DNA of 64,000 nt, from the sequence record MN453779.2; one strand, written 5' to 3'. A program made the position numbers and the translations under genes. Under the pieces are notes generated by a model. That model ran no database searches and was not told where the DNA came from. It was given only the letters and a program-made list of their open reading frames with translations. Shown here one piece after another: positions 27,854 through 50,300 of this stretch. How positions within the stretch are numbered: position 1 is the stretch's first letter; every line of letters starts with the position of its first letter.

Positions 27854-28396
27854 ATGGAAAACATGCAATGGGTTTGTTACACAGATGGGAGTTGTCTTGA
27901 CCAAAACAGTGGAACAGGAGGAAGTGGCGCGTGGGCATTTCATGCTATTTTTGGAGAATCGATAGTAGAGAAGTCTTGTGGGTATTTTAAGACTACTAAT
28001 AATAGGATGGAGATATTAGCCATTATCTCTTTTCTAGAGGAGTTTCAAGAGCCCACTAAGGTTACTATACGAAGCGATTCTCAATACACCATTGATGCCG
28101 TTACTAAATGGATCTATGGTTGGATTAAGAATGACTGGGTAACTTCTCAGGGACAACCTGTAAAGAACAAAGACTTATTTGAACGATTGTTTAAATTGGT
28201 AAAGTTTCATACAGTGAAGTTTGAAAAAGTAAAAGCTCACTCTGGCATTATTGGTAATGAACGTGCTGATGAATTAGCCAAGGAAGCAGCAGGAAATCCA
28301 ACATTAGTTGATGAAGGTTATATACCTCCAGATCCTAATGAGGTTAAACCTGTGGTTGTAAAAAAACCTTGGTGGGTAAAATATAAAAAGAAATAA
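27854..28396 (+). CDS. rnhA: ribonuclease HI
   Basis: YTDGS, TTNNRMEILA, IRSDSQY, VKNKDL, KVKAHSGIIGNERADELA. Confidence 0.93.
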   Translation: MENMQWVCYTDGSCLDQNSGTGGSGAWAFHAIFGESIVEKSCGYFKTTNNRMEILAIISFLEEFQEPTKVTIRSDSQYTIDAVTKWIYGWIKNDWVTSQGQPVKNKDLFERLFKLVKFHTVKFEKVKAHSGIIGNERADELAKEAAGNPTLVDEGYIPPDPNEVKPVVVKKPWWVKYKKK

Positions 28397-28397
28397 A

Positions 28398-28427
28398 GTT
28401 CACCCAACTCTATTGAGTTGGGTGAAC
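28398..28427. terminator. 13-bp stem hairpin
   Basis: gttcacccaactc-tatt-gagttgggtgaac. Confidence 0.75.
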
Positions 28428-28435
28428 AATTCAGA

Positions 28436-28458
28436 ATAATTTATTTATTTTATATTAC
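28436..28458 (+). promoter_or_regulatory. putative early promoter facing tailspike A 3' end
   Basis: ATAATTT-atttattt-TATATTAC. Confidence 0.6.
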
Positions 28459-28603
28459 ATTGACCAAGTAAATGACATTGGTAGAACACGATCGTATATT
28501 CTATTACAACTTCAATAAATACAAACCCGGCGAAGCGGGGTAGTGTTTCACTCAAAAACTGGACCCGGGAGTGTTATTGCCCCGTCAATTACACCCGCAT
28601 TGA

Positions 28604-28705
28604 ATTGTACCTGAGCCGTACCGGCCATTGACAGTATTTTGGGTGACGTATTGGGTAGGTTCAACCAGAGCAAGCGCTAATAAGGATTCGTTGATACGAC
28701 GGTGA
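28604..28705 (+). pseudogene. relic C-terminus of small membrane (holin-like) gene
   Basis: ...VFWVTYWVGSTRASANKDSLIRR*; 18/20 aa identical to right-arm copy. Confidence 0.55.
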
Positions 28706-28711
28706 AAAGAA

Positions 28712-28734
28712 AAAGCCCCTGTGAAAGGGGCTTT
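28712..28734. terminator. bidirectional Rho-independent terminator of tailspike A
   Basis: aaagcccct-gtgaa-aggggcttt with A/U tracts. Confidence 0.85.
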
Positions 28735-28767
28735 ATTTTGCGGAGCATCTTCTGGTTGTGCCACTAG

Positions 28768-30732
28768 TCAAACATGTCGCACCACGCCCGTACAGCTATA
28801 TGTCTGCACCGAGCTGTAGAAACTGTCAAACGTCAGGCGAATAAACCCGCCATTATTGGACACAGCAACGGTTTTATCAAACCCATCATGTGACTTGGCT
28901 TTGTCGCCATAAATGTTACCAAACAGTTCATAAGCGCTTAACTCATCTGCTATCGTTATGCGGTACGCTAACAGAGCTGCGTGCTTATTGAATGCTATCT
29001 TTGTGTCTATGATTATAGAGAAAGTGGTGCCGGCTGTTTTTGAGTGCTCACAGAACGCCACCGTCCCTGCTTTAGGCCCCCCTGCCTTACCCTCGTAATT
29101 GAACGGCACTAGAGTGTTACCATGCACCTGAGTCTTAATCATCCCAAACCCAGTGGCCGAATCGAAAAGAATGTTTTCATGCCGAACTCTGGATTTCCCG
29201 CCAAGCGCGTAACCAGCCGGGATTGATGGGTAGCCGTTATTGGCGATGGGGACAGGGGCTATCTCGACCTCACCTAAATCGTTGTAGTTATCCAGCCCTG
29301 AGATTACATTTGGACAAGCAAGGAATCGGTTATTTTCATAAACATGAATTCGGGAGCCATTCGTTCCTCTGTTTATAGCTGTTCCGCATTTGTTGAAGAA
29401 GCAGTTATCAAAGGTCACATCATATTTGAAACCGCCAGCGGACAGGTCCACACCGATCCCAGAATCCCCCTCTAGGTAACACGTATCGAGCTTGATAGGG
29501 CCAGTCTCGCCGGAAATGATAATCCCGTTTGTGCACCCCTCAGCCGAGCAGCAATACAGAGTCTGGCCGTTAGCCCCGCTCGATATTTCAATCCCAGTGA
29601 CACGCCCACTTACAAACACCGATTCAATCGCGCAGACGTTGACAAAATCACGGAAGTAAAAAGCCGGCAACGTGGTTCCCCCTCCACTACCGCGAGAGAA
29701 CAGGTTAACGAAACGCCCGTAGAAACAGCGAGCAGCATAAACAGGTTGAGTACAGTTGGTGAAGTAGATGTTACTAAGCTCACTGTTGAACAGAAAGTTG
29801 TATAGATTAAATACCTTACCACAATCTCTAATACTGGCATTTTTTACAGCAGCCTGCCGAACCAGAATTGTTTCTGGTGGGGCACCGATGTTGCTTATGA
29901 CAGCGCCGCCGGATAAATACCCGCTCTGGAAAACGTCTACAGAACTCCCCAGACCCGGGCCAATAATTTCAGAGTTGCAGAAGTCTAGCTCTACGCAAGA
30001 TGGTACGATCACCGTTTCCGTCAACTTGTAAGATCTATATGGTGCGATTATGCGCCCACCGCCAGCAAGCGCGACATACAGTATCGCGGAGACGAATGCG
30101 GGTGAGTCATTAGTTGTGCCATCCCCCGCTGCGCCAAAGTCGAGGACGTTAAATATAAGCCTGGAGCGCAGTAGCTCACCGCTGCGATCAACAAACCCAC
30201 CGCTCGCTGGGTCAGTACCAGCGGCAACTACACCAGCAGGCCCGGAGAATACCTTACCAGTGCGCTCTTGCAGCAACACATCATTACTATTTACAAGAAC
30301 ACCACCTTGTTCAAAACTCCCTTCAACAAGATCATATCCTGCTTCTTGATAAGTTCTACGAAGTGCTTCTCTTGCTATTACACGTTCATCCCTAGTAACA
30401 ATACCCCATCCTTTCTTACCACCTGGGGTAGGAGAACTATTAGCTGGAACTACATAAGGTAATTTACCATTCCAACTGTACCAATATCCATCTGTTGGAT
30501 AAAAAACACATTTATCACGATCACCGATGCCTAAAGTGCCACCATTAACAAAGTCAAATCCTGCTGGTTTGAACCCAACATCTTTCAAAGCCTGTTGTAC
30601 AGTTTTGTGTTGTTTACCGAAACGATCCTGCCACAATGCAGCTGGGGAATTCATCGCATAATCAAACGAAATAGCGTTATCTTGTAAGTCTTCAGTTGCT
30701 GAAGACCCAATAGGGTTTTGTGTGAAAAACAT
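28768..30732 (-). CDS. tailspike A, polysaccharide depolymerase-type receptor-binding protein
   Basis: N-terminal anchor plus TSP/gp66-like docking modules; NVLDFGAAGDGTTNDSPAF pectate-lyase-3-like start; beta-helix; GC-rich C-terminal region. Confidence 0.85.
   Translation of the reverse strand: MFFTQNPIGSSATEDLQDNAISFDYAMNSPAALWQDRFGKQHKTVQQALKDVGFKPAGFDFVNGGTLGIGDRDKCVFYPTDGYWYSWNGKLPYVVPANSSPTPGGKKGWGIVTRDERVIAREALRRTYQEAGYDLVEGSFEQGGVLVNSNDVLLQERTGKVFSGPAGVVAAGTDPASGGFVDRSGELLRSRLIFNVLDFGAAGDGTTNDSPAFVSAILYVALAGGGRIIAPYRSYKLTETVIVPSCVELDFCNSEIIGPGLGSSVDVFQSGYLSGGAVISNIGAPPETILVRQAAVKNASIRDCGKVFNLYNFLFNSELSNIYFTNCTQPVYAARCFYGRFVNLFSRGSGGGTTLPAFYFRDFVNVCAIESVFVSGRVTGIEISSGANGQTLYCCSAEGCTNGIIISGETGPIKLDTCYLEGDSGIGVDLSAGGFKYDVTFDNCFFNKCGTAINRGTNGSRIHVYENNRFLACPNVISGLDNYNDLGEVEIAPVPIANNGYPSIPAGYALGGKSRVRHENILFDSATGFGMIKTQVHGNTLVPFNYEGKAGGPKAGTVAFCEHSKTAGTTFSIIIDTKIAFNKHAALLAYRITIADELSAYELFGNIYGDKAKSHDGFDKTVAVSNNGGFIRLTFDSFYSSVQTYSCTGVVRHV
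30187..30375 (-). repeat. shared tailspike junction module, copy A
   Basis: REALRRTY...DVLLQERTG...GFVD; exact blocks gaagcacttcgtagaac and tgctgcaagagcgcac in all three spikes. Confidence 0.9.
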
Positions 30733-30794
30733 ATAAAACCTCTTTCTATTAATAGGTAGTTAAAGAAGTCATTTAAGCTTCTTTAAAATCAGTT

Positions 30795-30803
30795 CATAAG
30801 ATC
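30795..30803 (-). promoter_or_regulatory. putative late promoter for tailspike A
   Basis: GATCTTATG on minus strand. Confidence 0.6.
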
Positions 30804-30812
30804 TGGGGAAAC

Positions 30813-30821
30813 GATTTTATG
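30813..30821 (+). promoter_or_regulatory. putative late promoter, back-to-back with previous
   Basis: GATTTTATG. Confidence 0.6.
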
Positions 30822-30848
30822 TTCATATACTTTAAGAAAGGTCTAATT

Positions 30849-31838
30849 ATGGAACTTGCTAATTTTAAAAAATCCAAGCTTCGGGAGTTTTATCTAACTG
30901 CCAAAGCGGATCTTCAGTTGGTTGAAACTAATATTCTTGGAAATAAAGAAAAATACGAGGGGTGTGAATCTTCCAGCGAAGAACATGCTCTTTTAATTCA
31001 AGTCGCTTCTTATGCCAAGGAAACCTATAATGCTAACGTCACACCAGATATCGATGGAATGGAAGGGTTTGCCGAGGCACTAAAAACTGGACTCAAGCGA
31101 GTAGCTGAATTATTCAAGTCAAAACCAAATAAAGAGCAATTGGCTGTTCTTAAGAAAAATGCCAGTGAGATCACAGCTGCAATAGATCTTTATAAAAGTT
31201 CCAAATGGTTGGACGCACAAACCTTTATCAATGTTGGTCATGTCAAGTTCAATACACCTAAGTTGTTTGGTGAAGTTAAAACAATCGATGATGTTAAAAA
31301 GATCATTGAAGAGATCACCAAAAAGTACGACGCTGTTTTTAAACCCACCTTGGACGACGCATGGAAACGCTTAAGCAAGGGTAGTTCAATTTTTAGCAAA
31401 TATGAAGATAAAGAACCTTCTGAAAAACTGATTAAAGAAGTGGCGGGGTTGGTTCCTATTGCACCGATCTTTAAACCATTCCCTAAAGATTTCATTACGA
31501 GCGCTCTGGGCGGAAATAAAGTCACTATCTCTATCTCGGCACTCACTAAAAGCGACGTTCAAAACGTTGTGGACTTGATGGTGGAGTTAAAGAAGTTCTT
31601 TTGGGAAAAAGAAGAAGCCATGGAAGTGTTACTTTTCGACCTGATGAGCTATGAAGAATATTGGGATAGCGATTTTTGGTCAGAAGTCCCAGAAGAAATT
31701 ATGACGAAGATGGAGAGCGCTACTGAATGGCGTAGCGTTAATGAAACCATCCTCGGACCTCTTTCTAAAGAGTTAGGTGGGATTGTCATGACCATCGGAA
31801 GATTTCTGGAAGATTGGATTCTTTACTCCATTAAATAG
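30849..31838 (+). CDS. putative internal head / virion protein
   Basis: DIDGMEGFAEALK region resembles cleaved head-protein families of phiKZ-like phages (recall); late motif upstream. Confidence 0.45.
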   Translation: MELANFKKSKLREFYLTAKADLQLVETNILGNKEKYEGCESSSEEHALLIQVASYAKETYNANVTPDIDGMEGFAEALKTGLKRVAELFKSKPNKEQLAVLKKNASEITAAIDLYKSSKWLDAQTFINVGHVKFNTPKLFGEVKTIDDVKKIIEEITKKYDAVFKPTLDDAWKRLSKGSSIFSKYEDKEPSEKLIKEVAGLVPIAPIFKPFPKDFITSALGGNKVTISISALTKSDVQNVVDLMVELKKFFWEKEEAMEVLLFDLMSYEEYWDSDFWSEVPEEIMTKMESATEWRSVNETILGPLSKELGGIVMTIGRFLEDWILYSIK

Positions 31839-31850
31839 TTATTTACTATG

Positions 31851-31878
31851 CCCCACCTAACCAAGTGGTTAGGTGGGG
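31851..31878. terminator. 12-bp stem hairpin
   Basis: ccccacctaacc-aagt-ggttaggtgggg. Confidence 0.75.
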
Positions 31879-31913
31879 TTATGTTTATAATAATTAAAAA
31901 TTTACTGGGTTCT

Positions 31914-31935
31914 ATATTTTTTCAGATAGATATTA
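31914..31935 (+). promoter_or_regulatory. putative early promoter
   Basis: ATATTTT-ttcagata-GATATTA. Confidence 0.65.
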
Positions 31936-31984
31936 TTAAGTTGTATAAACCAAGTAAGTTGTTCAATAGTCTAGGAGAAAGTAT

Positions 31985-32353
31985 ATGCGTTTTAAACATG
32001 AATCTTTAATGAAAGTTAAGAAAGTTTTAATGACCCGTGTAAGTTACATTATTAACTTGCAAATTCGTAATGGTGAAAAAGCTGTTGATCTTTCAACCAA
32101 GTACAAAATCAACCCCACTACTATTTCTGAACTGAAACTTCAGAAAGTTGATAAGATGAGTCTTGATCGATTGATTACCTGTGCCGATAAAATGGGATTA
32201 GAATACTCCATTGGGATTACTAACTTCAATGGTTATAAGACCGTTGACGTTTCTTTACCCAAATACGATAACGACCCAGTAATACGTCAGATCGATATGA
32301 AACGTCATCAGCACACTGGTCAGGTATCTCAACAATCTACTCAAGCGGTGTAA
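31985..32353 (+). CDS. XRE-family HTH DNA-binding protein
   Basis: KAVDLSTKYKINPTTISEL...KMSLDRLITCADKMG HTH pattern. Confidence 0.65.
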   Translation: MRFKHESLMKVKKVLMTRVSYIINLQIRNGEKAVDLSTKYKINPTTISELKLQKVDKMSLDRLITCADKMGLEYSIGITNFNGYKTVDVSLPKYDNDPVIRQIDMKRHQHTGQVSQQSTQAV

Positions 32354-32356
32354 TAA

Positions 32357-32662
32357 ATGATCAAGGAAATTTTGTCAAATAGTGAATGTGTAGAGAAGCA
32401 GTTGTTGAAAACCTTTCCTAATTTCAATCAAGAGTTTCCAGAGGAGTTGAAACTCACATTGATTAACATGATCAAACACGATGAAACAGTTACTGTCTTC
32501 CCAAATACAGTAGAAGTTAAGAACAGTTCTTTCAAAGAGTTGGTAATTAAAATCTGTAAGGAGTGGATTATTTTTATCACTGAAGAGTTGAAGGATTACA
32601 CCTGTTTCTACCGACAAGCTAATTTGGATAAAATCAAATCTTTTATTAGCTTACACAGTTAA
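32357..32662 (+). CDS. hypothetical protein
   Basis: 101 aa, tightly packed. Confidence 0.6.
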   Translation: MIKEILSNSECVEKQLLKTFPNFNQEFPEELKLTLINMIKHDETVTVFPNTVEVKNSSFKELVIKICKEWIIFITEELKDYTCFYRQANLDKIKSFISLHS

Positions 32663-32710
32663 TAAACACTCTTGGTGAAATTATTAGCTAAGCATCGGGA
32701 GGTTTGTTAA

Positions 32711-32809
32711 ATGAAATTAACAAAGCGTTCTGGATTGGTGATTGTAATTACAATCACCTTCTGGGTTATAACTGGGATAGTTGGTTACCAACTTTATCAA
32801 CAAGGGTAA
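32711..32809 (+). CDS. small single-TM protein (not in ORF track)
   Basis: GGAGG RBS; MKLTKRSGLVIVITITFWVITGIVGYQLYQQG. Confidence 0.55.
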   Translation: MKLTKRSGLVIVITITFWVITGIVGYQLYQQG

Positions 32810-32818
32810 GGGAACATT

Positions 32819-34174
32819 ATGTCTAAGAAAGCTAAAGAAGTTAAAGCGGTTAAAGTCGCTGAAACCAAAACTGTGGATGGGTTGGAAGACAACGTACAAA
32901 ACGAACAGGAAGAATCTGATACCCAAGATTCTTCCTGTGTTTTTTCTGCCTTAATTGAACCATCTTCACCACCTATTGTAGAACTGGAAAATGTCGAGGT
33001 TAAACCTAAGTACGTGTTGGATAACATAACCAACAAACCAAAGCTGAAAGTTGGTGATAAAGAAATTGAGCTTAAAGAAGTTCAACTGACCAGTGATCAT
33101 TTCTTTAATGTTAATAGTTTCCGTAGCTCCCCAAGACATTATCACTTTAGTAATCATTACAGTGAAAATGAAATGAGAAAGGTTGAAGGCGAACCTAAGT
33201 GGTACGGCGCGGAAGTTAACGGAGTCCAATTCTTCCTGACCCAAGGTTCTGTTGTAGACCTTAAACGCCTAGATAACCAAACCGGTTATGGTGGACCCAA
33301 CACCGATGGTCGTAAACCTTGTGTTAAGGTTACTTATTCTACTATCATTACTGATAACCTTTCCATTCGTGGATTTGAAGAGAATCGACTGTTTAATGTC
33401 GGATTAACTGGCGAGTGGATTTGCATTGATAATGTTTCTTTGTCAGATGGTAAAGTAGAAATTGAAAACTCCATAGATCTTACAAATGTGAGTCTAAGTG
33501 TTTTCAGCATTACTCGTACAAACTCTCTCGATCTTAACCAGTTTAACGGTAGTAGAATTTCGTTGAAAGGGTTTAATTCGATCAGAATTTACAACAGTAG
33601 CTGCTACTGTCATTTTGAAAATTCTTTCATTCTTGATTTACCAAATAAGAAGATGGTCAATCTTTCCATTGGAAAGACCACTCTTAGTGATTTCAAGTTT
33701 ATTAACTATAATCATAATCTTTGCGAGGGGTTAGATGTTAACTCCAAAATCGTTATAGATAAACGTATTGACTATGGTTATATCACTGGTCTGAAGCCTG
33801 TTCCTTTTGTGCGTGTTGGTCGCAGTGGGATCTTGGTAGGTAGTCAGTATTTTACCGCTGTAGAAATGTTGGGTAAAATCAATACAGCTACTCTGCACGA
33901 GATCACACCTATCTCTCCGTGGTATCCCACTCCTACCTTTGGTTCTCCAAGAGCTCTAGATCCATTGGTTGGGCGTGATGTTGCTGATAAAGCTTATAGC
34001 GTAGCTTTTAACTCTGGTTATAAAGGTAAGGTTCCTGAACATCAACCTGATCAACTTGTAGTAGATATTGTCCAAACCACAATTGACCAGATTCGTTCCA
34101 AAGTCAAGGTTTTTGCTTTGATTGACACTCTAATTTCTGGTGACTTTGAATATGACGATGAATACCCCTACTGA
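32819..34174 (+). CDS. hypothetical protein, possible beta-solenoid
   Basis: 451 aa; acidic N-terminus; N/S/L/I-rich repetitive middle. Confidence 0.65.
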   Translation: MSKKAKEVKAVKVAETKTVDGLEDNVQNEQEESDTQDSSCVFSALIEPSSPPIVELENVEVKPKYVLDNITNKPKLKVGDKEIELKEVQLTSDHFFNVNSFRSSPRHYHFSNHYSENEMRKVEGEPKWYGAEVNGVQFFLTQGSVVDLKRLDNQTGYGGPNTDGRKPCVKVTYSTIITDNLSIRGFEENRLFNVGLTGEWICIDNVSLSDGKVEIENSIDLTNVSLSVFSITRTNSLDLNQFNGSRISLKGFNSIRIYNSSCYCHFENSFILDLPNKKMVNLSIGKTTLSDFKFINYNHNLCEGLDVNSKIVIDKRIDYGYITGLKPVPFVRVGRSGILVGSQYFTAVEMLGKINTATLHEITPISPWYPTPTFGSPRALDPLVGRDVADKAYSVAFNSGYKGKVPEHQPDQLVVDIVQTTIDQIRSKVKVFALIDTLISGDFEYDDEYPY

Positions 34175-39313: not shown

Positions 39314-39322
39314 CTAAGATAT

Positions 39323-39357
39323 AACTCTCTACTCCCAATTAAAGGGAGTAGAGAGTT
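39323..39357. terminator. 14-bp stem hairpin, near-identical to 15137..15170
   Basis: aactctctactccc-aattaaa-gggagtagagagtt. Confidence 0.75.
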
Positions 39358-39369
39358 ACTTTAATATCC

Positions 39370-40085: not shown

Positions 40086-42395
40086 ATGTCTAGCAATAAA
40101 CCTTTCCCGTCGTCAGATCTTGACGTATTTAAAGAAAACAGTCTTATATTAGACAATTTTGTCAACAGTCAGGAAAACGAACATCCTGATCGTTTTGCAA
40201 GAAAAAGGCCAACTATTACAGGGATTATCAAAGAAGCTTTTAATGTCCGCACTGATATTTCCAATATGAATGAAACTCTTATTGGTCAAAGTCGTTGGGA
40301 TGCTGTTCCCAAGAACACTAGCTTAGCCCTAGGTGGGGATAATGGTGCTTTGAACAAACAAGCACAAGCTTTATTTAACCGAACCGAATTGTTGAAAACC
40401 CATGCAAGAGAAGCACTTCGTAGAACTTATTTAGAAGCTGGTTTAAATCTTGTTGAAGGTAGTTTTGAGGCTGGCGGTACTCTCGTAAAGGCTAATGACG
40501 TGTTGCTGCAAGAGCGCACCGGCAGGGTGTTCTCTGGTCCTGTCGGTGTAGTTGCCGCGGGGACTGACCCAGCGAGCGGTGAGTTTGTTGATAGAAGTTC
40601 AGTACTTCTAAGAGATATGTCGCAGAAAATATTCAGTACTACCGCGGCCGTGATATCAGCGGCAGCAACATTGAAAATCGGCGATTTAGTCAGCACAGCA
40701 GGTCACACTACGGTCGGGGTCGGGGCGGCAGATTACGTGGTCTCTACAGACATCGCCCGCCCTTTCTTGGACATTAGCTTGGGGGATGGACGGATAGCCA
40801 AAATGCTTATCAAGGAATACATAGACCCAGCTTCTTGTGGTGTTGATACAACTGGTGTTCAGCCGGCCTCGCTGGCGCTTGCTGAAATTTCAAAGCATGG
40901 TTCTATCTCGTGGATTGGTTCGCTTTATATAGACCAAGAGTTCATTTTCGCAGCAGGCAATGACCTGATAGGGCAAGGCCAGCATAAATCGAAGTTGTTA
41001 TTCAAGAATTCCGGTGTTGGCAAGGGTATCGTCAAGTCTACCAGGAGCCGATTCTATAACTTTGGTGTTACGTTAAAGGATTTTTTGGCTCCATTCGATG
41101 GGCAGATGATCACGGTATCAGTGCAGTATGATTACTATATCTACGGCACAGTCCCACGTGAATCAACTGGATATGACCGGCTGGTGTTGGATCACAGTAG
41201 TGATATTTATGCTGTCTCAACAGGTGGAACCAGCCCAAGCGGGGCATCAACAGGCCGCTTCTTGGTGCTGGATACAGGTGATATTAATGGCATCCCAATC
41301 CCCCCGCTAGCAACTCAGCTTGGTATTTACAAATCCCGGTTTGATAACTGCACTGCTATTGGTTTCTATTGTCCATTGACTTTGTTGAGCCGTACTGATC
41401 GCGCTAATCAAGGTGCTCCTTGGATGCACTCCAACCGATTCGCTGGTTGGGTTACAAAAAACAACGTGGTCGAGTTTGAGGCATTGATTCAGACGGTTAC
41501 ACCGAGAGCCGGGTCATTCACTGATAACAAGATAGAAGATTGGGTAACTCAGCCATACAAGAACTCTCAGCGCATCGCCACCATGGAAGGGGCTGGGTTC
41601 AAATTCGTGGACTGTTTCTTCTGGGATCAACACCTCTACCCAGACCAGAGCAAACTGATTGTACTGAGGAAATCAGCCACAGGGGACACAAATTGGATTG
41701 AAAGAAATTCTTTCTACAATGACCACAGACCATCACTGGAATTTGTGCGCTGTCCAATCACCAGAAATAAGATTTCTGTCGAGAATATGACGACAAATCT
41801 ATGGCCTGCTGTCATCAAAATCACCGATAAATTTGGCAATGGAGATTGTGTCGGTGATATACCCATACTTAGTAACATTACAACAGGGACCAATATATCG
41901 AGGTTCATGGCTGTTAACTTCACTACACCGCAGACGGTCGGTGCTGTAGCGCAGTGTACATTCAAAATTAAATCAAAATGGCCGTTAGCTACCGACCCAT
42001 TCCGGGGGGCCATCTACGCCATTGACATTGCTATCAACGTCAAGTTGACTGCTACGGGGTTTGAAGTGAAAACGCACTTGCTAACACCTTACACAGGAAT
42101 CAAAACAGGTATTGATATCTATGCAGATAACCCCCGCCTCGTTAACGGCGAGTACATGTTAGATATTGTTGCATCTCAGAACAGTGTGGCAGCGCCTTTC
42201 CCGTCAATACGACTCAATGACAGCCCTTTACAGAACGGGGACTGGCAGTTATCTAATTCATACGGTATCATTTTGCCTATTCCGTCTGGCCATGGGGCAA
42301 CGACACTATCTGACGCTGCGGTGAAGATAGTGGACACGTTAGATCTGATTGCAGCGAATACAGTCATATCAAAGACAACCGCAATCAGCATATAG
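40086..42395 (+). CDS. tailspike B, depolymerase-type receptor-binding protein
   Basis: ATG 40086 after GAGGA; distinct N-terminus (LGGDNGALNKQAQALFNRT), shared junction module, GC-rich beta-helix region. Confidence 0.8.
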   Translation: MSSNKPFPSSDLDVFKENSLILDNFVNSQENEHPDRFARKRPTITGIIKEAFNVRTDISNMNETLIGQSRWDAVPKNTSLALGGDNGALNKQAQALFNRTELLKTHAREALRRTYLEAGLNLVEGSFEAGGTLVKANDVLLQERTGRVFSGPVGVVAAGTDPASGEFVDRSSVLLRDMSQKIFSTTAAVISAAATLKIGDLVSTAGHTTVGVGAADYVVSTDIARPFLDISLGDGRIAKMLIKEYIDPASCGVDTTGVQPASLALAEISKHGSISWIGSLYIDQEFIFAAGNDLIGQGQHKSKLLFKNSGVGKGIVKSTRSRFYNFGVTLKDFLAPFDGQMITVSVQYDYYIYGTVPRESTGYDRLVLDHSSDIYAVSTGGTSPSGASTGRFLVLDTGDINGIPIPPLATQLGIYKSRFDNCTAIGFYCPLTLLSRTDRANQGAPWMHSNRFAGWVTKNNVVEFEALIQTVTPRAGSFTDNKIEDWVTQPYKNSQRIATMEGAGFKFVDCFFWDQHLYPDQSKLIVLRKSATGDTNWIERNSFYNDHRPSLEFVRCPITRNKISVENMTTNLWPAVIKITDKFGNGDCVGDIPILSNITTGTNISRFMAVNFTTPQTVGAVAQCTFKIKSKWPLATDPFRGAIYAIDIAINVKLTATGFEVKTHLLTPYTGIKTGIDIYADNPRLVNGEYMLDIVASQNSVAAPFPSIRLNDSPLQNGDWQLSNSYGIILPIPSGHGATTLSDAAVKIVDTLDLIAANTVISKTTAISI
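40404..40591 (+). repeat. shared tailspike junction module, copy B
   Basis: 40404-40430 is the exact reverse complement of 30349-30375. Confidence 0.9.
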
Positions 42396-42411
42396 GCTGA
42401 CTTATGAAATC

Positions 42412-42433
42412 AAAGCCCCTTCACAGGGGCTTT
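42412..42433. terminator. bidirectional terminator of tailspike B
   Basis: aaagcccct-tcac-aggggcttt, one base different from tailspike A terminator read in gene direction. Confidence 0.85.
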
Positions 42434-42701
42434 TCCATTTTGCAGTATTCCATTACTAAGTCCTGTACATCGATTTACCCTCAACCAGACTTCCTGTCTC
42501 ACCTGATCAAATGCGTCCTCAGTCTGTATCTGGGACACGAACACGGGGCGCGAATCCCCAACATGTGGATGTTGTATTGGATCTAATCAATTGATGTACA
42601 TTTCATAAATGTACACGTTGTAGTTTGCTCGACATCCATGCAATAATTACTATAGAAAATGAGCAAACATATTTGTAAACTAGATTAAAACAATTAATTT
42701 A

Positions 42702-42734
42702 AACTCTACTTACTCCTTAGGAGTAAGTAGAGTT
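42702..42734. terminator. 15-bp stem hairpin
   Basis: aactctacttactcc-tta-ggagtaagtagagtt. Confidence 0.7.
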
Positions 42735-42756
42735 ATTTTATATTCTTTATTTTATT

Positions 42757-42765
42757 GATTTTATG
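42757..42765 (+). promoter_or_regulatory. putative late promoter
   Basis: GATTTTATG. Confidence 0.6.
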
Positions 42766-42795
42766 ACCCTTTAATTTAACTTAAGGAAATGAATT

Positions 42796-43188
42796 ATGCA
42801 TAATACTGGGAATGACTTAGAATCGAACGATATTCTTGACTTTGAAGACAATACCGTCAATCTTGACATTCTAATGAATGCCGATCAAGAGTACTGGATA
42901 GACCGTCTTGGTAATAAGCGACCCACCATTGATTACGCTTTGCGTATGGCTGGGTTCACACCTGCTGGGTTTGATTTCACCACAGGTGGTGTTTTAAAGA
43001 ATGGTGATCGAAATAAATGCGTATTTAACCAAGCTGATCAAACTTGGTATAGTTGGTCAGGCGATCTTCCTTATAATGTAATTGCTGGTAGTACGCCTGG
43101 GGAAGGTTGGAAAGTACAAGTCACTCCTTCTGTTATTACCAAACTTCAAGAATTGGAAACTAGAATAACTGTTTTGGAAAATAAATAA
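42796..43188 (+). CDS. anchor-only tailspike paralog (no receptor-binding domain)
   Basis: Homologous to N-termini of spikes A and C (DRLGNKRPTID..AGFDF..GG.L...DRNK..YSW.G.LP), then short coiled coil. Confidence 0.8.
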   Translation: MHNTGNDLESNDILDFEDNTVNLDILMNADQEYWIDRLGNKRPTIDYALRMAGFTPAGFDFTTGGVLKNGDRNKCVFNQADQTWYSWSGDLPYNVIAGSTPGEGWKVQVTPSVITKLQELETRITVLENK

Positions 43189-43600: not shown

Positions 43601-43630
43601 CTCTACTTCTCCTTAATTGGAGAAGTAGAG
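43601..43630. terminator. 12-bp stem hairpin
   Basis: ctctacttctcc-ttaatt-ggagaagtagag. Confidence 0.7.
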
Positions 43631-43699: not shown

Positions 43700-44746
43700 A
43701 TGATAAATGTTTATTTCTCGGAATTACCTAAAACTTTAACTGAAATATTAGAGTTAAAGTATGATGAAACAATGTCTTATGAGGAAAGAGTTCAAAAGCG
43801 TTACAATTATATTAAAGAACAATTGGAAAAGAATCCAGGGTATGAAGGATGGGATTATCTTGAAAATGTTAAATATGGATTAAAGTTTGAACACTTAATC
43901 ACCTTTGAATATATGATTTCTACTAGAGGTAGAATTTTAACTTTGTTTATGCAGGAAGGAATATATAAGGTACTTAAAGGTAAGTTATCCAATTATGGTT
44001 ATAGGGAACAAATCATATCAATTAATAAGTTGTCATATGGTTGTAAACCGCATAGAACATTATGCTCTACCTTCATACCTAAACCAAGTCATTATAAACA
44101 AGGAATAAATCGTTTAGTGGTTAATCATAAAGATTTAATTAAGTTGAATAATCACTTTACTAATCTTGAATGGTGTACTAATCAAGAGAATACCAGACAT
44201 CAATTAATAGAATATGGGAATAGAAATACTTACTTTAATTCAATATTCCAAGGAACCATAGAACTTGATTGTAAATATAAAGGCGTTAAGTTTAAAGTAT
44301 ATGGAACTGAAGGTCTAGAAGACATTGGGTTGGATGGTAATGCTTTGAGTAAAGTCTTTACCAAGGGTTACGAGCTATCTTTCGGGTGTAGTTGGAAATA
44401 TATAACCCAAGAAGAAGCTGATAAACTACCGGATATTCCTGAATTTATTAAGAATAAGTTTCTTAATGATAGAAACTATATGAATCATCGTATTAAACCT
44501 TTAAAAGGAACAGTTGTTAGGGAATGTGAATATAAAGGTTTAGAGTTTGTTATTTACGGTAAACAGGAATTGCAAAGCTTTGATATTAATCAAGGTAATG
44601 TTTCGGTTTCTATTGTTACTGGAAAGGTCATACACAGTTGTTTGTGGGAATATATTACTAGAGACGAAGCTGAACTATTGCAAAGGGGTTTAACTAAAGA
44701 GCAACAAAAAGTTATTGTTACTAAGAGAGGGCCTAATAAGAAGTAA
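43700..44746 (+). CDS. HNH homing endonuclease (paralog of 26316..27800 second module)
   Basis: VNHKDLIKLNNHFTNLEWCT; long shared nucleotide blocks with 26787-27790. Confidence 0.85.
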   Translation: MINVYFSELPKTLTEILELKYDETMSYEERVQKRYNYIKEQLEKNPGYEGWDYLENVKYGLKFEHLITFEYMISTRGRILTLFMQEGIYKVLKGKLSNYGYREQIISINKLSYGCKPHRTLCSTFIPKPSHYKQGINRLVVNHKDLIKLNNHFTNLEWCTNQENTRHQLIEYGNRNTYFNSIFQGTIELDCKYKGVKFKVYGTEGLEDIGLDGNALSKVFTKGYELSFGCSWKYITQEEADKLPDIPEFIKNKFLNDRNYMNHRIKPLKGTVVRECEYKGLEFVIYGKQELQSFDINQGNVSVSIVTGKVIHSCLWEYITRDEAELLQRGLTKEQQKVIVTKRGPNKK

Positions 44747-44748: not shown

Positions 44749-44776
44749 CCAACACCTTCCATTAGGAAGGTGTTGG
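44749..44776. terminator. 12-bp stem hairpin
   Basis: ccaacaccttcc-atta-ggaaggtgttgg. Confidence 0.7.
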
Positions 44777-44803
44777 TATAAATAATCTCATTTTTATTTT
44801 GTT

Positions 44804-44812
44804 GATTTTATG
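44804..44812 (+). promoter_or_regulatory. putative late promoter for tailspike C
   Basis: GATTTTATG; its ATG was taken as start by the ORF track. Confidence 0.6.
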
Positions 44813-44842
44813 TACCTTAAGATAAACAATAGGAATACTGTT

Positions 44843-46981
44843 ATGACTAGATTTAATACAGGTAATGTCATTCCATCGCTAGCCGAAGAAGATTTTTATG
44901 ATAACTCCATGGCTTTAGATGAAGCCATGAATAGCACTGATCCAACTTGGAGAGATAGATTTGGAGTTGAGAAGCCTACGATCGACGCAGCTTTGAAATC
45001 TGCCGGGTTTATGCCGGCTGGATTTGACTTTGTAACTGGCGGGACTCTTCAACCTGGAGATCGCAATAAAGCTGTTTACAATCCTGCTCCTAACGGCGAT
45101 AATAATTGGTATCGTTGGAATGGTGCATTTCCGAAAGAAATTGCTGCTAATAGTCAACCTAATCCCAAAGATGAAAATAATTGGGTATTGGCACATTTTA
45201 GAATTGGAATAGTCGAAAAGGAAGCACTTCGTAGAACATATTTGGAAGCAGGTTATAATCTTGTTAACGGTAGCTTTGAACAAGGTGGGACGTTAGTAAA
45301 TAGTAATGATGTGCTGCTGCAAGAGCGCACAGGGAAAGTATTCACCGGCCCTGCGGGTATAGTTGCCGCCGGAACGAATCCGGCGAGCGGCGGGTTTGTT
45401 GATGTGTCGCCATTCGTATTGAAGACTGAGCCGCCACTGATAGCAAAAACAGGTTCATTCTCATCTGGTGGGCGTGCGGAATCTATGAAATCTGCGCTTC
45501 TTTCTTCAGACGGTTACTACTACACACCGAGAACTGGTGTTATCACAGCGGCTCCAGGATCATCTCCTAATTCTATGTGGGTCTGTGTGGGTCTGCTTAA
45601 CGGAGCGCCCATAGACGACATGCTAAACTGGCTTGATGGTCGCCCGCATCTAAATGCTTTCATTGCTGCTCGCGACAGCAAGTCAATTCGTGGCGGCGGG
45701 GTGGTCACTTTCCCTGCTGGCGATTACACGTTTGCTGATGAATTCGTGTGCGTAGATTACGTCAAGTTTGTGGGTGAAGATCGTAGCAAGTGTCGCATAT
45801 TTGGTGCAGCGGGTTCAGGAGCGGGAAAGGCTGTAGTGAGAGCTTGCAAGTCGCCTGTCGGTTCTGCTGACATACCGGAATATCTATCTTATTCGGGGTT
45901 TAGTAACTGCACAATTAACGGCAACGCAACTTGGGATGTTGGCCTTTACGTTCGCCACTGTACAAACGAATCTGTTTTCGATAACGTTACAGCGCAGAAC
46001 TGTAAAAAGGCTAACTCAATTTTTATCGGCGTCTTTTATGTTAGTGCCAAAAATCACGTAAGCCGAGACGCACGTGACTTGGGTGCTGTCATCGGTAAGA
46101 AGATTTTCAGCGAAGGCGGGCTTCGTGAGGTTAATGCTTCAGCTTTCAATAACCTCAGAGGCAATTACGCAGGACTTGACGACGCCTATGATCCGACCAC
46201 AAACCCATATGCAGGTGCCTGCATAACAATATGGACCGCTAACAGTTGCGCATTTGATTATGTTGGTGCCGAGAATGCTTACGGTGCTGGTGCTATTATC
46301 CGCAAAGGGATAAACAGCACAATCCCGAACTTGTATGTCGAGTCCAATGGGAAGGGCACTGCTGCTGTGGATAAGATCGGAGCCAGGATCATTGCTGCAG
46401 ATTTCCCTTCACTGATCATTGGTTCCCTCTTTGCAACAAGACAGCAGAAGATTTATCTGGAGGGGAGCTCACTGCTGCAAGTTGGCGAAATCTACTCTGA
46501 GTCTTTTGCAAATGGAATTTTCATGGGCACAGGCAAAGTGCTGTTGATGAATGGCCACAGCGCCAATAATTACATTGGGGCAGATCAAGCATTCATTAAT
46601 AACATTGAAACTAAACGCATTGCTCAGTTTGGGAATGTCCCTTTCACCAACTTCGCGAGCCTAGACTCCACAGCTGTTATTTTTGGCGAGGCAATGACAA
46701 ATGTCCAAGTGGTGATGGTGCCTAGAGTAACTTTAACCACGGCAGACCCGATAGTCATTGGGCTGTCAAATTCTCTATCCGGGGGGCAAGTGCTAGAATT
46801 TGGGACATCGTTTACTGCGGGAGTGCCTATTACCAAAACGTTCAGCAAAGTTTCTAAAGGTGCTGGAAGACTTACTCACCGGTCAAATTACCTGCCATCT
46901 ACAACAACAAACTTTGCAATGGACGTGTTCATTATTCAGTACGTTTGTGATTACCAGGCTATTTATAACAAGTGGTTTTAA
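44843..46981 (+). CDS. tailspike C, depolymerase-type receptor-binding protein
   Basis: ATG 44843 after AGGA; anchor like A; GGGVVTFPAGDY beta-helix start; GC-rich C-terminal region. Confidence 0.85.
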   Translation: MTRFNTGNVIPSLAEEDFYDNSMALDEAMNSTDPTWRDRFGVEKPTIDAALKSAGFMPAGFDFVTGGTLQPGDRNKAVYNPAPNGDNNWYRWNGAFPKEIAANSQPNPKDENNWVLAHFRIGIVEKEALRRTYLEAGYNLVNGSFEQGGTLVNSNDVLLQERTGKVFTGPAGIVAAGTNPASGGFVDVSPFVLKTEPPLIAKTGSFSSGGRAESMKSALLSSDGYYYTPRTGVITAAPGSSPNSMWVCVGLLNGAPIDDMLNWLDGRPHLNAFIAARDSKSIRGGGVVTFPAGDYTFADEFVCVDYVKFVGEDRSKCRIFGAAGSGAGKAVVRACKSPVGSADIPEYLSYSGFSNCTINGNATWDVGLYVRHCTNESVFDNVTAQNCKKANSIFIGVFYVSAKNHVSRDARDLGAVIGKKIFSEGGLREVNASAFNNLRGNYAGLDDAYDPTTNPYAGACITIWTANSCAFDYVGAENAYGAGAIIRKGINSTIPNLYVESNGKGTAAVDKIGARIIAADFPSLIIGSLFATRQQKIYLEGSSLLQVGEIYSESFANGIFMGTGKVLLMNGHSANNYIGADQAFINNIETKRIAQFGNVPFTNFASLDSTAVIFGEAMTNVQVVMVPRVTLTTADPIVIGLSNSLSGGQVLEFGTSFTAGVPITKTFSKVSKGAGRLTHRSNYLPSTTTNFAMDVFIIQYVCDYQAIYNKWF
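45221..45403 (+). repeat. shared tailspike junction module, copy C
   Basis: gtaaatagtaatgatgtgYtgctgcaagagcgcac shared with A (1 mismatch). Confidence 0.9.
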
Positions 46982-46984
46982 GCC

Positions 46985-47008
46985 AAAGCCCCTCAATCGA
47001 GGGGCTTT
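46985..47008. terminator. bidirectional terminator of tailspike C
   Basis: aaagcccctc-aatc-gaggggcttt. Confidence 0.85.
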
Positions 47009-47012
47009 CCTT

Positions 47013-47186
47013 TCACCGTCGTATCAATGAGTCTTTATTTGCACTCGTCCTGGTTGAACCAACCCGGTAGGTCACGCAAGACGTTAATATTCTTGATACT
47101 GGCCCAGCCATGTAAACCACGATATCCTTGTTCTCACCAGGAATAGCCCAGATAAACAGAGCGCCGATAATGGCTCCGGTTTTTGA
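47013..47186 (-). pseudogene. relic C-terminal part of small membrane (holin-like) gene
   Basis: SKTGAIIGALFIWAIPGENKDIVVYMAGPVSRILTSCVTYRVGSTRTSANKDSLIRR*; no proper start. Confidence 0.6.
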
Positions 47187-47281
47187 GTAAATACATTGCC
47201 CCCGCTTCGGCGGGTTTGTATTTATTGAAGTTGTAATAGAATGTACGATCGTGTTCTACTTGTCTCGCTTATTCTGTCAAT

Positions 47282-47304
47282 GTAATATACAATAAATATA
47301 TTAT
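47282..47304 (-). promoter_or_regulatory. putative early promoter facing tailspike C 3' end
   Basis: ATAATAT-atttattg-TATATTAC on minus strand. Confidence 0.6.
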
Positions 47305-47312
47305 TCTGAATT

Positions 47313-47342
47313 GTTCACCCAACTCAATAGAGTTGGGTGAAC
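47313..47342. terminator. 13-bp stem hairpin (copy of 28398..28427)
   Basis: gttcacccaactc-aata-gagttgggtgaac. Confidence 0.75.
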
Positions 47343-47347
47343 TTTAT

Positions 47348-50300
47348 TTATCTTTTCATTTCGACGTTAACTATTACATCCCAACTTCTTTCATTATCTG
47401 TTAAAATAATTCTTAGTTGTGTTTCCCCTATCTTACCAGAACTACTGACATTTATTCTGTATTTTCCATCTTCCACTAATTTAACTTTACTGTTAATAAC
47501 TGTTATGAAAGTAGGATCAAAATCAACTTTACCGATTTCTATTGCGTTAAGAGGAACATCAGGTTCATTGTACTTATCTAACTTAACAGTAAAATCTATA
47601 TCAGAATTCACATTAAGAACAGCTATTCCATCAGATACTTCCGAAACCTTAGGAATAACTGGATTAACTTCAATACCAACCTTACCTGAACTCACTGTTA
47701 TACCGCCTAAGTTTACACTAATAATAAACCCACCATTACCGCCCAAATGACTTAACATCAAATGCGATTGATAAATGCCATTTACTGGATCTATTAGTTC
47801 TATAAAACTATCGGTCCCGATAATGGTTGGTAAATTATTATCTCTATTTTGATACCCTACTCCAGCTGTTCTGGCGTTATAAATATAAGAACCAGCTTGG
47901 TCTTTTAGTTTATACAAAATAGCTTGTTTGGTACTAGCTGTAAGGTTATTAGTTAGTAATTCAACAGTTATCCCACTGACAACTCTTCTTGTTACTTGTA
48001 CTAATCCACCTACTTCCTTCCTATATAAGCTAACGTCATCTAACAATCTAACTTCCAAATCTATTTCGGAAATATCGTCTTCCCCCATAGGAACAGATTT
48101 AGTTGTTTCTAAAATTATCCCGTTAGGTTCAATTGACTTAACAAAGACTTCAATGGAAGATAAACTTACATTTACACTAACTCTTGGGTCATTAAGAGAA
48201 ACGCTAGCCCCGTTGTAAATAACAGAAACATTGAGTTTATTACTTAAATAAGACTCAATACTAACCACCCCATCCATAATAACTTTCAATGGATAACTTG
48301 GTGAGATATCGGTTATTACGCTTAGTTCCCCTAATAATCCAGGTTCATTAGGATCTATGCATCTCAGGATGGAAGTAACCAATCCTTGTTCTATTAAACT
48401 ATATCCAATAGTAATAAACTGATCAGTTACTTTCTTTAATCCACTAAAGGTTACATTGGGATGTAAAGTAGAAAGTTCGGGTTTATACAAGACTCGATTA
48501 TTTATCCGCTCACGTTTATTGTAAACGCAAACATCAAACTCTCCGCTTTCTAACTCCCTTCCTTCTATATCTTTAATTCCAGGAATTAAAGCTAAATCAG
48601 GTCCTGTATAACCTAAGATTTCAAACTCTTGTTCCCAAGAAAAGTCTTTCTCAATCCCATCTACCAAAATCTTAAACTTAAAGTTAACAGTCTGAAGACT
48701 AGTCTGAGTACCGCCGTCAACCACAATCCAAGTTTCTTTTATAGTCCAAGGATCAAAGTTAATTATCACTGGAGAAGTTTCACTATTCTCAACATTAACA
48801 GATCTAACTTTATCACTAGATTCATTACCATTAATGTAAACTTGGAATGGCAATGGTCCTTTTTGATATTTAGTCACTGTTTTGTTAAAGCTAGTTCTAG
48901 GTCTTAAATCAACAGTAGAGACTTTAATAACTTCAACATATAGTTTATCACTTCTGGTGTGCAGTTCACCATTACTAGCTGGGTGTTTTAATCCAAGATT
49001 AATACTATCGGTAATAACCATTCCAGGTGAATTAGAATCTTGAACTATTCCGTATCCAAAGCTCTCTGTATCGATCTGTGTTACATTTACAAGTTGTCTT
49101 TGACCAACCAGTCCTGTATTAAGTCCGCATTGATTTAAAGCTAATACAGACCCTTTTAAAGTAACTTGGTAATTGACATTACCAATATCACCTCTCTCCC
49201 CTTTAATTAAAACTGGTTCTAAATTAACCAATTCTAATTGTTCTTGTTCACCCAAGGGTTTAGTAACTTCCAATTCAACAAACAAATTACCTTTATTACC
49301 TTGGTAACTAAACTCTCCAATAATCAAATCTTTAAAACTAGAGTTGTAATCAGGGAGGATGGTTGTTGGAACACCTATATAAAGTAAACCATCTTTCCAA
49401 GTTTTGTCTAAAGTGTATTTGTCGTTAGTTAGTTTACAAGTTAGCCAGTTAGGGTATACGTCAGGGATAACTTCAGTTCCATTAACTTGACATTTAACAA
49501 CAATACCTAATTTGTATAAAGTAGAAGTTCTAATAGTTTCAGTTTGCGCTGAAACAATTAGATTACCAACTTCATCATGATTAACCACAAAACCTACTGT
49601 AACGACTTTAGAGAAGATGTAATCGTCATGGGTTACATTGATGCTGATTTCTACTTCATCGCTTAATACGGAGCCTGCAGAGCCTTTGATGAAGGTAAAA
49701 ATACTTTCTAGTTTATTAGGAGATTGTTTCCCAGAAATAAAACCATTTTTACTTCTGTAAGTTAATTCCGTTTTAGCGGTTACATCAACACCATTAGCAG
49801 TAAAGAGATTAGTAAACCTAACTTCTTCACCTCGTTTACCAGAAAAGGAGCTAGGGAAGTTATCAGTCACTGTATTAAGATCAAGTTGTTCTTGAACTAA
49901 CTCTTCTACAAATAAGTGTACCGGTTCTGTACCTACTGAGTCGTCGGTAATCAATACACCGCCCGATGTTAACTCGCTCTTACTAATATAAGTTTCATCT
50001 TCCCGATAGAACTCAGATTGCTCAAAGAACACATCGCCCATTAGTTCATTGAATTTAGCTAACCCAAAAGCATCTTCGTGTTTAACACAATACCCTAAAG
50101 CATTTCTCCAAACTAAGTTAAGTAGTTTCCCCTGTACTTCTTTCCTATTAAACTTATTCTTAAAATCAGTTAAATTATTACAAACAACAACTTCTCTATT
50201 AAAGTCTTTAGCAATAGTCAACAAGTTAACTGTGGAAACAGGAATATCTACTCTAGCAAATGACTTAGCGCGCTTCACTAAACAGATCTTCTTAGACCCA

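What the first reader, a model, noticed from the sequence alone, without database searches (positions are those of the whole stretch)
28391..47349. Candidate system: tailspike cassette capture and exchange with 5' and 3' homology arms
Three depolymerase-type spikes (28768-30732 minus, 40086-42395, 44843-46981) have AT-rich phage-like N-termini that converge on one ~190 bp module. All three share the exact blocks gaagcacttcgtagaac and tgctgcaagagcgcac. After the module the sequences are unrelated and GC-rich (31/60 GC at 29461-29520 vs 21/60 at backbone 17041-17100). Each ends in a near-identical host-type terminator, then a 270-305 bp trailer, then a phage-type hairpin. Two trailers retain the same convergent donor-gene relic. 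Inference: the jumbo phage maintains landing pads on both sides of the receptor-binding domain, so double crossovers with an unrelated ~50% GC phage or prophage family swap in new capsule specificities. RuvC, SbcC, ligase, RNase H and two HNH nucleases are in the window. Modular RBP exchange is established; a fixed two-arm architecture repeated at several loci is what looks new.
Basis: partly seen in the sequence, partly recalled or inferred. Interest (0 to 1): 0.9.

Follow-up and report, generated by a model that had tools for sequence, protein, structure and literature searches.

The report
Swappable tailspike cassettes in Aeromonas phage
A jumbo Aeromonas phage carries three tailspike genes whose enzyme halves, with a short stretch of donor DNA behind each, were taken from a pool shared with unrelated smaller phages. 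This is a clean new example of receptor-binding-domain swapping between conserved flanks, which has already been described.

Summary
The window is Aeromonas phage PS2 (Ferozepurvirus, 240 kb).

- **Loci:** three spikes share a 63-aa junction module. After it come unrelated GC3-rich enzyme parts, the same terminator (T1), a 268-305 nt trailer and a native hairpin. Two trailers hold a relic of a convergent gene.
- **Foreign origin:** sibling phages carry other cassettes at the same loci. Relatives of each PS2 cassette (76-87% nt) sit in unrelated phages, and similarity starts in the module and ends at or after the stop codon.
- **Source of the trailers:** about 42 kb, roughly 50% GC phages have the intact layout: small membrane-protein gene, T1, then a convergent module-bearing spike.
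- **Reuse of the relic:** one relic with the same truncation point flanks three different cassettes in the genus. It has therefore marked the 3' boundary of repeated swaps.
- **Not supported:**
  - The module is conserved as protein only, so landing pads kept by selection are not shown.
  - 3' junctions fall at several places, and some sibling loci lack T1 and relic, so the architecture is not fixed.
  - Pas et al. 2023 already proposed conserved motifs before and after the receptor-binding domain as recombination hotspots, so the idea is not new.

Verdict: a real feature and a new member of a known kind.

The parts
28768..30732 (-). Tailspike A (PS2_0152, 654 aa): anchor 30370-30732, junction module 30181-30369, foreign enzyme cassette 28768-30180
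   Evidence: Annotation. Pfam PF12708 at 34.5 bits, above its cut-off, and Tail_spike_N at 23.8 bits, just below. GC3 is 0.25/0.27/0.52 for the three parts. The cassette is 87% nt identical to L014 and 82% to L015, starting inside the module.
28397..28767 (-). Trailer A: T1 terminator 28712-28734, relic of a convergent membrane-protein gene (coding on + strand, 28643-28699), T2 hairpin 28526-28539, native hairpin 28398-28427
   Evidence: The part from T2 to the hairpin is 88% identical to trailer C. Similarity to PS1 and pAEv1810 resumes at 28540/28548.
40086..42395 (+). Tailspike B (PS2_0169, 769 aa): anchor 40086-40409, module 40410-40592, foreign cassette 40593-42395
   Evidence: Similarity to siblings ends at 40478-40481. 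Positions 40446-42565 are 80% nt identical to a Plateaulakevirus-like metagenomic phage, L011.
42396..42795 (+). Trailer B: T1 42412-42433, conserved donor-type non-coding stretch X about 42434-42565, native hairpin 42702-42734
   Evidence: X also lies behind the spikes of phiA005, phiA009, phiA047, BUCT696 and L011. In L030-L032 it lies between the intact membrane-protein gene and T1. Sibling similarity resumes at 42684-42693.
42796..43188 (+). PS2_0170: anchor-only remnant of a fourth spike (130 aa), lacking module and enzyme part
   Evidence: Tail_spike_N at 33.2 bits. Residues 1-109 are 92-93% identical to the N-termini of the full-length 753-957 aa spikes of AVP1 and ACP1 at the same locus. 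DNA similarity ends at 43115 and resumes at 43153.
43700..44746 (+). Free-standing HNH endonuclease gene (PS2_0172) 97 nt upstream of spike C. It is context only; no role was shown.
   Evidence: Pfam HNH_3 and PHROG HNH families. Absent from PS1 at this site. Nine paralogous places in the PS2 genome.
44843..46981 (+). Tailspike C (PS2_0173, 712 aa): anchor 44843-45220, module 45221-45403, foreign cassette 45404-46981
   Evidence: Tail_spike_N at 30.6 bits. GC3 is 0.29/0.38/0.45 for the three parts. Nucleotide identity is 86% to L016/L017 (podovirus with a P22-type portal), 79% to L018 (T7-like), 76% to L019 (Plateaulakevirus-like) and 70% to a Mu-like prophage of A. hydrophila, L020.
46982..47347 (+). 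Trailer C: T1 46985-47008, relic (minus-strand coding, 47019-47177), T2 47201-47214, native hairpin 47313-47342
   Evidence: Positions 46985-47178 are 83-84% nt identical to T1 plus the 3' end of the intact gene in L033, L035 and L036. The same relic truncation point is present in PS1 and ACP1.

Best explanation
These are mosaic receptor-binding loci of a multi-spike jumbo phage. Each spike has a locus-specific N-terminal anchor, which fixes it to the baseplate. It is joined through a conserved 63-aa junction module to an enzyme domain drawn from a pool shared by many unrelated Aeromonas phages.

Shown:
- The PS2 cassettes at loci A, B and C are foreign.
- Each brought non-coding donor DNA with it: terminator T1, then either stretch X or the 3' end of a small membrane-protein gene.
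- That layout exists intact in about 42 kb, roughly 50% GC phages related to 62AhydR11PP.

Inferred: exchange happens during mixed infection or with prophages. One crossover falls in the module, which is homologous because the protein domain is conserved. A second falls downstream in the trailer (T1/X, relic, T2 or the native hairpin). Once a relic is resident it is homologous to the intact gene next to donor spikes, so later swaps can resolve in it.

The arms are best read as by-products: a conserved protein domain and hitchhiked DNA that make exchange easier. They are not sequences kept for that purpose.
For: - GC3 steps from about 0.25-0.35 to 0.45-0.58 just after the module. This happens only in spikes with foreign-type trailers. 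Sibling spikes with the native terminator directly after the stop codon have low GC3 throughout.
- The cassettes keep GC 0.46-0.49 in every carrier, whose backbones range from 0.365 to 0.616.
- pAEv1810 spike A and BUCT696 (53 kb, Chaseviridae) share 88% nt over 1823 bp, from the module to about 100 nt past the stop codon.
- PS2 B and L011 share 80% nt over 40446-42565.
- PS2 C and L016-L018 are similar from inside the module to 47013, the end of T1.
- phiA047 and L011 are 91% identical up to the module end, unrelated across the cassette, and similar again from T1/X.
- All 15 mapped 5' breakpoints lie between -37 and +189 nt of the module start. All 3' breakpoints lie 0-371 nt after the stop codon.
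- The intact donor layout is seen in L028, L030-L033 and L037.
- The relic truncation point (residue 113 to 115 of the donor protein) is shared by PS2 C, PS1 C, ACP1 C and pAEv1810 A. Upstream of it there are three different cassettes, with T1 alone or T1 plus X.
Against: - No donor above 88% nt was found for any cassette, so no recent event was caught.
- Module nucleotide identity between partners is only 70-84%, with exact runs of 17-21 nt. That is marginal for ordinary homologous recombination.
- 3' junctions are spread over at least five positions.
- Clustering of 5' junctions at a domain boundary is also what selection for working chimeras after illegitimate joining would give.
- The PS1/PS2 difference at locus A is a 3.3 kb tract (28540-31863). 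It includes the anchor and a neighbouring gene, so it is exchange between related jumbo phages, not a module-to-relic swap.
Confidence: 0.7

Rival explanations
1. Ordinary mosaicism without any role for flanking homology. Cassettes enter by illegitimate recombination, and only chimeras joined at the anchor/enzyme domain boundary and ending outside the gene survive. The trailers are passive hitchhikers.
For: - Synonymous sites of the module are not conserved.
- 3' junctions are scattered.
- Relics are truncated at five or more different points in different lineages.
- The relic in pAEv1810 carries a stop codon.
Against: - Several independent comparisons end inside shared sequence rather than at its edge: 30286, 30297, 40446, 40480, 45329, 45339, 45362.
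- One relic truncation point lies behind three different cassettes.
- The same bounded pattern is seen between two Plateaulakevirus-like phages.
Confidence: 0.2
2. A dedicated diversification system. The module, T1 and relic are kept by selection as landing pads, possibly helped by double-strand breaks from the neighbouring free-standing HNH endonucleases.
For: - The architecture is repeated at three loci in PS2.
- The arms are shared across six or more unrelated phage lineages.
- HNH genes sit directly upstream of spike C in PS2 and of spike B in AVP1.
Against: - There is no nucleotide-level constraint in the module.
- The relic is decaying, and sibling loci do without T1 and relic.
- With nine HNH paralogs per genome, adjacency to a spike is not unusual.
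- PS1/PS2 identity beside the HNH insertion equals that of the backbone, 97.4-97.5%, so no co-conversion tract is visible.
Confidence: 0.08
3. No transfer at all. The GC-rich halves reflect the amino-acid make-up of beta-helix proteins and are old residents.
For: Beta-helix domains are rich in Gly, Ala, Ser and Thr. GC1 and GC2 are somewhat raised.
Against: - The shift is largest at third codon positions.
- Sibling spikes of the same fold have low GC3.
- Siblings carry unrelated cassettes at the same loci.
- 76-88% nt relatives exist in unrelated phages.
Confidence: 0.02

Closest known systems
Conserved DNA motifs before and after the receptor-binding domain in lytic E. coli phages (Pas et al. 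2023, Virol J 20:174, PMC10408124)
   Same: [quoted passage not shown]
- A roughly 20 nt terminator motif after the gene.
- Both shared across unrelated genera and proposed as recombination hotspots for domain swapping.
- The PS2 module has homologues in the same E. coli phage groups: Ackermannviridae TSP3 at 74-75% aa, Kagunavirus and Justusliebigvirus.
   Different: - Here the hosts are Aeromonas.
- The 3' flank is not only a terminator but up to 190 nt of donor DNA, including a pseudogene relic of the donor's convergent neighbour. The intact source layout was found.
- Three loci in one jumbo genome show the pattern.
- T1 itself was not seen after the three E. coli spikes examined.
- Whether the module equals their motif one or two could not be checked, because the supplement holds no sequences.
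Branched four-tailspike complexes of Ackermannviridae (CBA120, Kuttervirus), with receptor-binding domains exchanged between tsp1-4, between genera and with distant phages (review PMC11721090)
   Same: - Several spikes per virion.
- Conserved N-terminal assembly domains of the Tail_spike_N type.
- Variable C-terminal domains shared with unrelated phages and prophages.
   Different: - Ferozepurvirus is unrelated to Ackermannviridae.
- Its spike genes are dispersed over 19 kb on both strands rather than lying in one cluster.
- Structural similarity of the anchor and module model to CBA120 TSP1, TSP3 and TSP4 is weak (E above 0.003).
Multi-depolymerase Klebsiella jumbo phages (phiK64-1, RaK2) and Botstein's modular theory of exchange at conserved linkers (my own knowledge, not tested here)
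   Same: A jumbo phage with many enzyme spikes on conserved anchors, and module exchange through short flanking homology.
   Different: No sequence relation was tested. As far as I know, those systems have not been described with a donor-gene relic as the 3' flank.

Membership tests
Modular anchor/enzyme tailspikes (Tail_spike_N type) | N-terminal Tail_spike_N (PF18668) anchor domain | tested here: met
   Spike C 30.6 bits and PS2_0170 33.2 bits, against a cut-off of 25. Spike A 23.8 bits, just below. Spike B has no hit.
Modular anchor/enzyme tailspikes (Tail_spike_N type) | C-terminal right-handed beta-helix or pectate-lyase-like enzyme domain | tested here: inconclusive
   Spike A: PF12708 at 34.5 bits, above the cut-off of 27. 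Spike C: 16.7 bits, below it. Spike B: none. Enzyme activity and substrate are untested.
Modular anchor/enzyme tailspikes (Tail_spike_N type) | Anchor conserved by locus among relatives while the C-terminal part varies and recurs on other anchors | tested here: met
   Anchors of types A, B, B2 and C are conserved in five genomes. Relatives of cassette C sit on T7-tail, phiTE_241_N, P22 head-binding and Calx-beta N-termini.
Receptor-binding-domain swapping between conserved flanking motifs (Pas et al. 2023) | [quoted passage not shown] | tested here: met
   The module was found in 73 phage records from Aeromonas, Escherichia, Klebsiella and Pectobacterium.
Receptor-binding-domain swapping between conserved flanking motifs (Pas et al. 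2023) | Conserved non-coding terminator motif after the gene | tested here: met
   T1 follows all three PS2 spikes and the spikes of pAEv1810 A, ACP1 C, phiA009, L011, L014-L017 and others. Caution: the 23-mer is a generic hairpin also present in unrelated bacteria. Homology rests on the adjoining X and relic sequence.
Receptor-binding-domain swapping between conserved flanking motifs (Pas et al. 2023) | Similarity breakpoints coincide with the motifs | tested here: met
Receptor-binding-domain swapping between conserved flanking motifs (Pas et al. 2023) | Same motif sequences as in the E. coli phages | tested here: inconclusive
   The module is 73-78% nt identical to E. coli phage PC3 TSP3. 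The published motif sequences are not held as text. T1 is not present after the three E. coli spikes read.
Invertible tail-fibre switches (Mu Gin, P1 Cin type) | Site-specific invertase next to alternative fibre segments, with inversion polymorphism | tested here: not met
   No recombinase is annotated in 28-47 kb. Gene order is collinear in five genomes.
Homing-endonuclease co-conversion | A polymorphic endonuclease gene with a flanking tract of altered identity | tested here: not met
   The HNH gene is present in PS2 and absent from PS1 at 43700-44746, but identity on both flanks is 97.4-97.5%, as in the backbone.

The most novel reading that the evidence does not exclude
The spike enzyme cassettes of Aeromonas phages form a semi-autonomous shared pool with their own base composition: GC about 0.47-0.49 in carriers ranging from 0.365 to 0.616. 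They would be bounded by a common 'exchange standard' of junction module and T1/X/relic that is itself favoured by selection, because it lets at least six unrelated phage lineages, jumbo phages with several sockets included, trade specificities.
Probability: 0.12. Interest if true: 0.75.

Novelty: new member of a known kind. Interest (0 to 1): 0.45.

Why it matters
It gives an unusually complete natural record of how a multi-spike phage changes its receptor-binding enzymes:
- the conserved junction on the 5' side;
- the hitchhiked donor DNA on the 3' side;
- the intact source layout in a different phage family;
- an emptied socket, the anchor-only PS2_0170;
- one relic behind three different cassettes.

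This supports the flanking-motif idea proposed for E. coli phages and extends it to Aeromonas. It shows that the 3' flank can be a pseudogene of the donor's neighbouring gene. The constant GC of the cassettes, whatever the carrier, gives a simple compositional marker for finding such cassettes. It does not reveal a new kind of system.

Tried and rejected
- An IMG/VR scan with cassette A found no relative. With cassette C it found only the known Ahp1-like podoviruses at 47%.
- A sequence search of solved structures found nothing for spike C. For spike A it found only an anchor match to the Sf11 tail protein (9occ) and weak beta-helix hits.
- An AlphaFold model of the anchor plus module (mean pLDDT 65) shows a helix followed by a small beta domain in the module. 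Foldseek hits to CBA120 TSP1, TSP3 and TSP4 are weak (E above 0.003), so the module's fold is not assigned.
- Reading stretch X as a second gene relic: a 58-aa open frame ends at T1 but has no protein relative among phages.
- T1 as a 'host-type' terminator was rejected.
- HNH adjacency as a mechanism has no support.
- PS2_0153 (30819-31838) is a conserved jumbo-phage protein of unknown function, not an endonuclease by any profile.
- The membrane-protein gene behind the relic belongs to phrog_1544, of unknown function. My first guess of a holin is not supported by any profile, and the gene follows a helicase operon.
Full report
**Identity and anatomy.** The window is Aeromonas phage PS2 (MN453779.2, genus Ferozepurvirus, 240 kb). 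The three spikes are annotated at the coordinates given.
- Each spike begins with a locus-specific anchor of 108-126 aa, of the Tail_spike_N type in A and C.
- A 63-aa module follows.
- After the module the proteins do not align.
- A fourth locus was missed: PS2_0170 (42796-43188). It keeps only the anchor of a spike that is 753-957 aa long in ACP1, AVP1 and pAEv1810.

**Composition.** GC3 is 0.45-0.52 in the C-terminal parts, 0.27-0.38 in the module and 0.24-0.33 in backbone genes. The shift is therefore not an amino-acid effect.
- Across five genomes of the genus, a GC3 step is seen only in spikes followed by foreign-type trailers.
- Spikes with the native phage terminator directly after the stop codon have low GC3 throughout. 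These are ACP1 A and B, AVP1 A, B and C, and pAEv1810 B.
- The cassettes keep GC 0.46-0.49 in every carrier, whether its backbone is 0.365 or 0.616.

**Trailers.** T1 occurs three times in the window, each just after a spike. A trailer of 268-305 nt and a native hairpin follow.
- Trailers A and C are homologous along their length. They carry T1, a relic, a second hairpin T2 and the same native hairpin.
- The relic is real. On the opposite strand, 47019-47177 encodes 53 aa that are 79% identical to residues 113-164 of a 167-aa membrane protein of phage 62AhydR11PP (phrog_1544, function unknown). Trailer A keeps 19 aa of it.
- Trailer B carries T1 and a conserved non-coding stretch, X.
- The exact T1 23-mer is a generic hairpin found in 37 unrelated bacterial genomes and in no Aeromonas genome. 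Homology rests on X and the relic, not on T1 alone.

**Source of the trailers.** Searching with the intact membrane protein found about 42 kb viral contigs with locus GC of 0.49-0.56. They carry Baseplate_J and helicase genes.
- In these contigs the intact gene is followed by T1, or by X then T1, and then by a convergent spike that carries the module. Examples are L028, L030-L033 and L037.
- Trailer C is 83-84% nt identical to T1 plus the gene's 3' end in L033, L035 and L036.

**Relatives of the cassettes and their breakpoints.**
- **Cassette A:** 87% nt to L014 and 82% to L015, starting at 30286 and 30297, inside the module.
- **Cassette B:** 80% nt to a Plateaulakevirus-like contig over 40446-42565, from the module to 170 nt past the stop codon.
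- **Cassette C:**
  - 86% nt to a podovirus with a P22-type portal;
  - 79% to a T7-like phage;
  - 76% to a Plateaulakevirus-like phage;
  - 70% to a Mu-like prophage of A. hydrophila.

  Where the module is present, similarity starts at 45221-45362. For the two closest relatives it ends at 47013, the end of T1.
- **In the sibling pAEv1810:** spike A shares 88% nt over 1823 bp with BUCT696 (53 kb, Chaseviridae), from the module to about 100 nt after the stop codon.
- **Outside the genus:** phiA047 and L011 are 91% identical up to the module end, unrelated across the cassette, and similar again from T1/X.
- **Against siblings:**
  - 5' breakpoints are 30187/30188 and 30406 at locus A, 40478-40481 at B, and 45186, 45339 and 45410 at C.
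  - 3' resumption points are 28540/28548 (at T2), 28397, 42684-42693, 47013 and 47347.

**Reuse of the relic.** PS2 C, PS1 C and ACP1 C share one relic truncation point at residue 113 of the donor protein, and pAEv1810 A has it at residue 115. They also share the backbone junction behind it. Upstream they carry three different cassettes, with T1 alone or T1 plus X. The relic was therefore acquired once, and cassettes were later replaced in front of it. Other phage lineages carry relics cut at residues 135, 138, 142 and 149.

**Limits.**
- Across 22 module copies the amino acids are conserved but the codons vary freely. The module is a conserved protein domain, not a nucleotide-level landing pad.
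- Exact runs between the PS2 module copies are only 17-21 nt.
- No donor above 88% nt was found.
- The PS1/PS2 difference at locus A is a 3.3 kb tract that includes the anchor and PS2_0153. PS2's A anchor is closer to ACP1 (93.5%) than to PS1 (85.6%). This points to exchange among jumbo relatives.
- The nearby HNH genes show no link to the exchange.

**Prior work.** Pas et al. 2023 describe conserved motifs before the receptor-binding domain and a terminator motif after it, across six genera of lytic E. coli phages, and propose them as recombination hotspots. The PS2 module has homologues in those same phage groups. Exchange of such domains in multi-spike Ackermannviridae is well documented.

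**Verdict.** The history of capture from a roughly 50% GC phage family through a 5' module and a 3' trailer is well supported. Double crossover in both arms is a reasonable inference. Landing pads kept for the purpose and a fixed, new architecture are not supported.

Noticed in passing
window 42796-43188: PS2_0170 (and its PS1 counterpart) is an in-frame, anchor-only remnant of a fourth spike. It has lost the module and the enzyme part, about 620-830 aa, that ACP1, AVP1 and pAEv1810 keep.
   Followed up: yes
window 28540-31863: A 3.3 kb tract differs between PS1 and PS2, whose backbones are 97.5% identical. It covers spike A, its anchor (closer to ACP1 than to PS1) and PS2_0153, a conserved jumbo-phage gene of unknown function. 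PS2_0153 is absent from PS1, ACP1 and AVP1 and only 39% identical in pAEv1810.
   Followed up: partly
window 43700-44746: An HNH endonuclease gene is inserted just upstream of spike C in PS2 but not in PS1. Its closest relative (78% aa) sits elsewhere in PS1. The PS2 genome holds nine paralogous places. AVP1 has an HNH gene just upstream of spike B.
   Followed up: partly
window 30181-30369 and 45221-45403; 28397-28566 and 47172-47347: Spikes A and C lie in opposite orientation, so their modules and trailers form inverted repeats 15-19 kb apart. A crossover between them would invert the segment in between and swap the anchors. All five genomes are collinear, so no such inversion is seen.
   Followed up: no
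L005 4163-4582 and 20406-22444 (pAEv1810): A 139-aa ORF with no family match is inserted between the relic and T2 in trailer A of pAEv1810. Spike C of that phage is annotated as two ORFs (372 and 308 aa), so it is broken once.
   Followed up: no
L033 355-3060: In one contig of the donor-type family the helicase upstream of the membrane-protein gene is 902 aa, against 596 aa in L032 and L037. It carries an intein splicing domain.
   Followed up: no
window 42702-42734, 39322-39358, 43601-43630: The native hairpin terminators form a repeat family. The stretch around 42692-42766 matches 5-10 places in each Ferozepurvirus genome.
   Followed up: no
L009 3744-3800 (BUCT696): The T1 region of the BUCT696 record holds a run of about 17 C in place of the left arm of the hairpin. 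This is probably a sequencing or assembly oddity.
   Followed up: no
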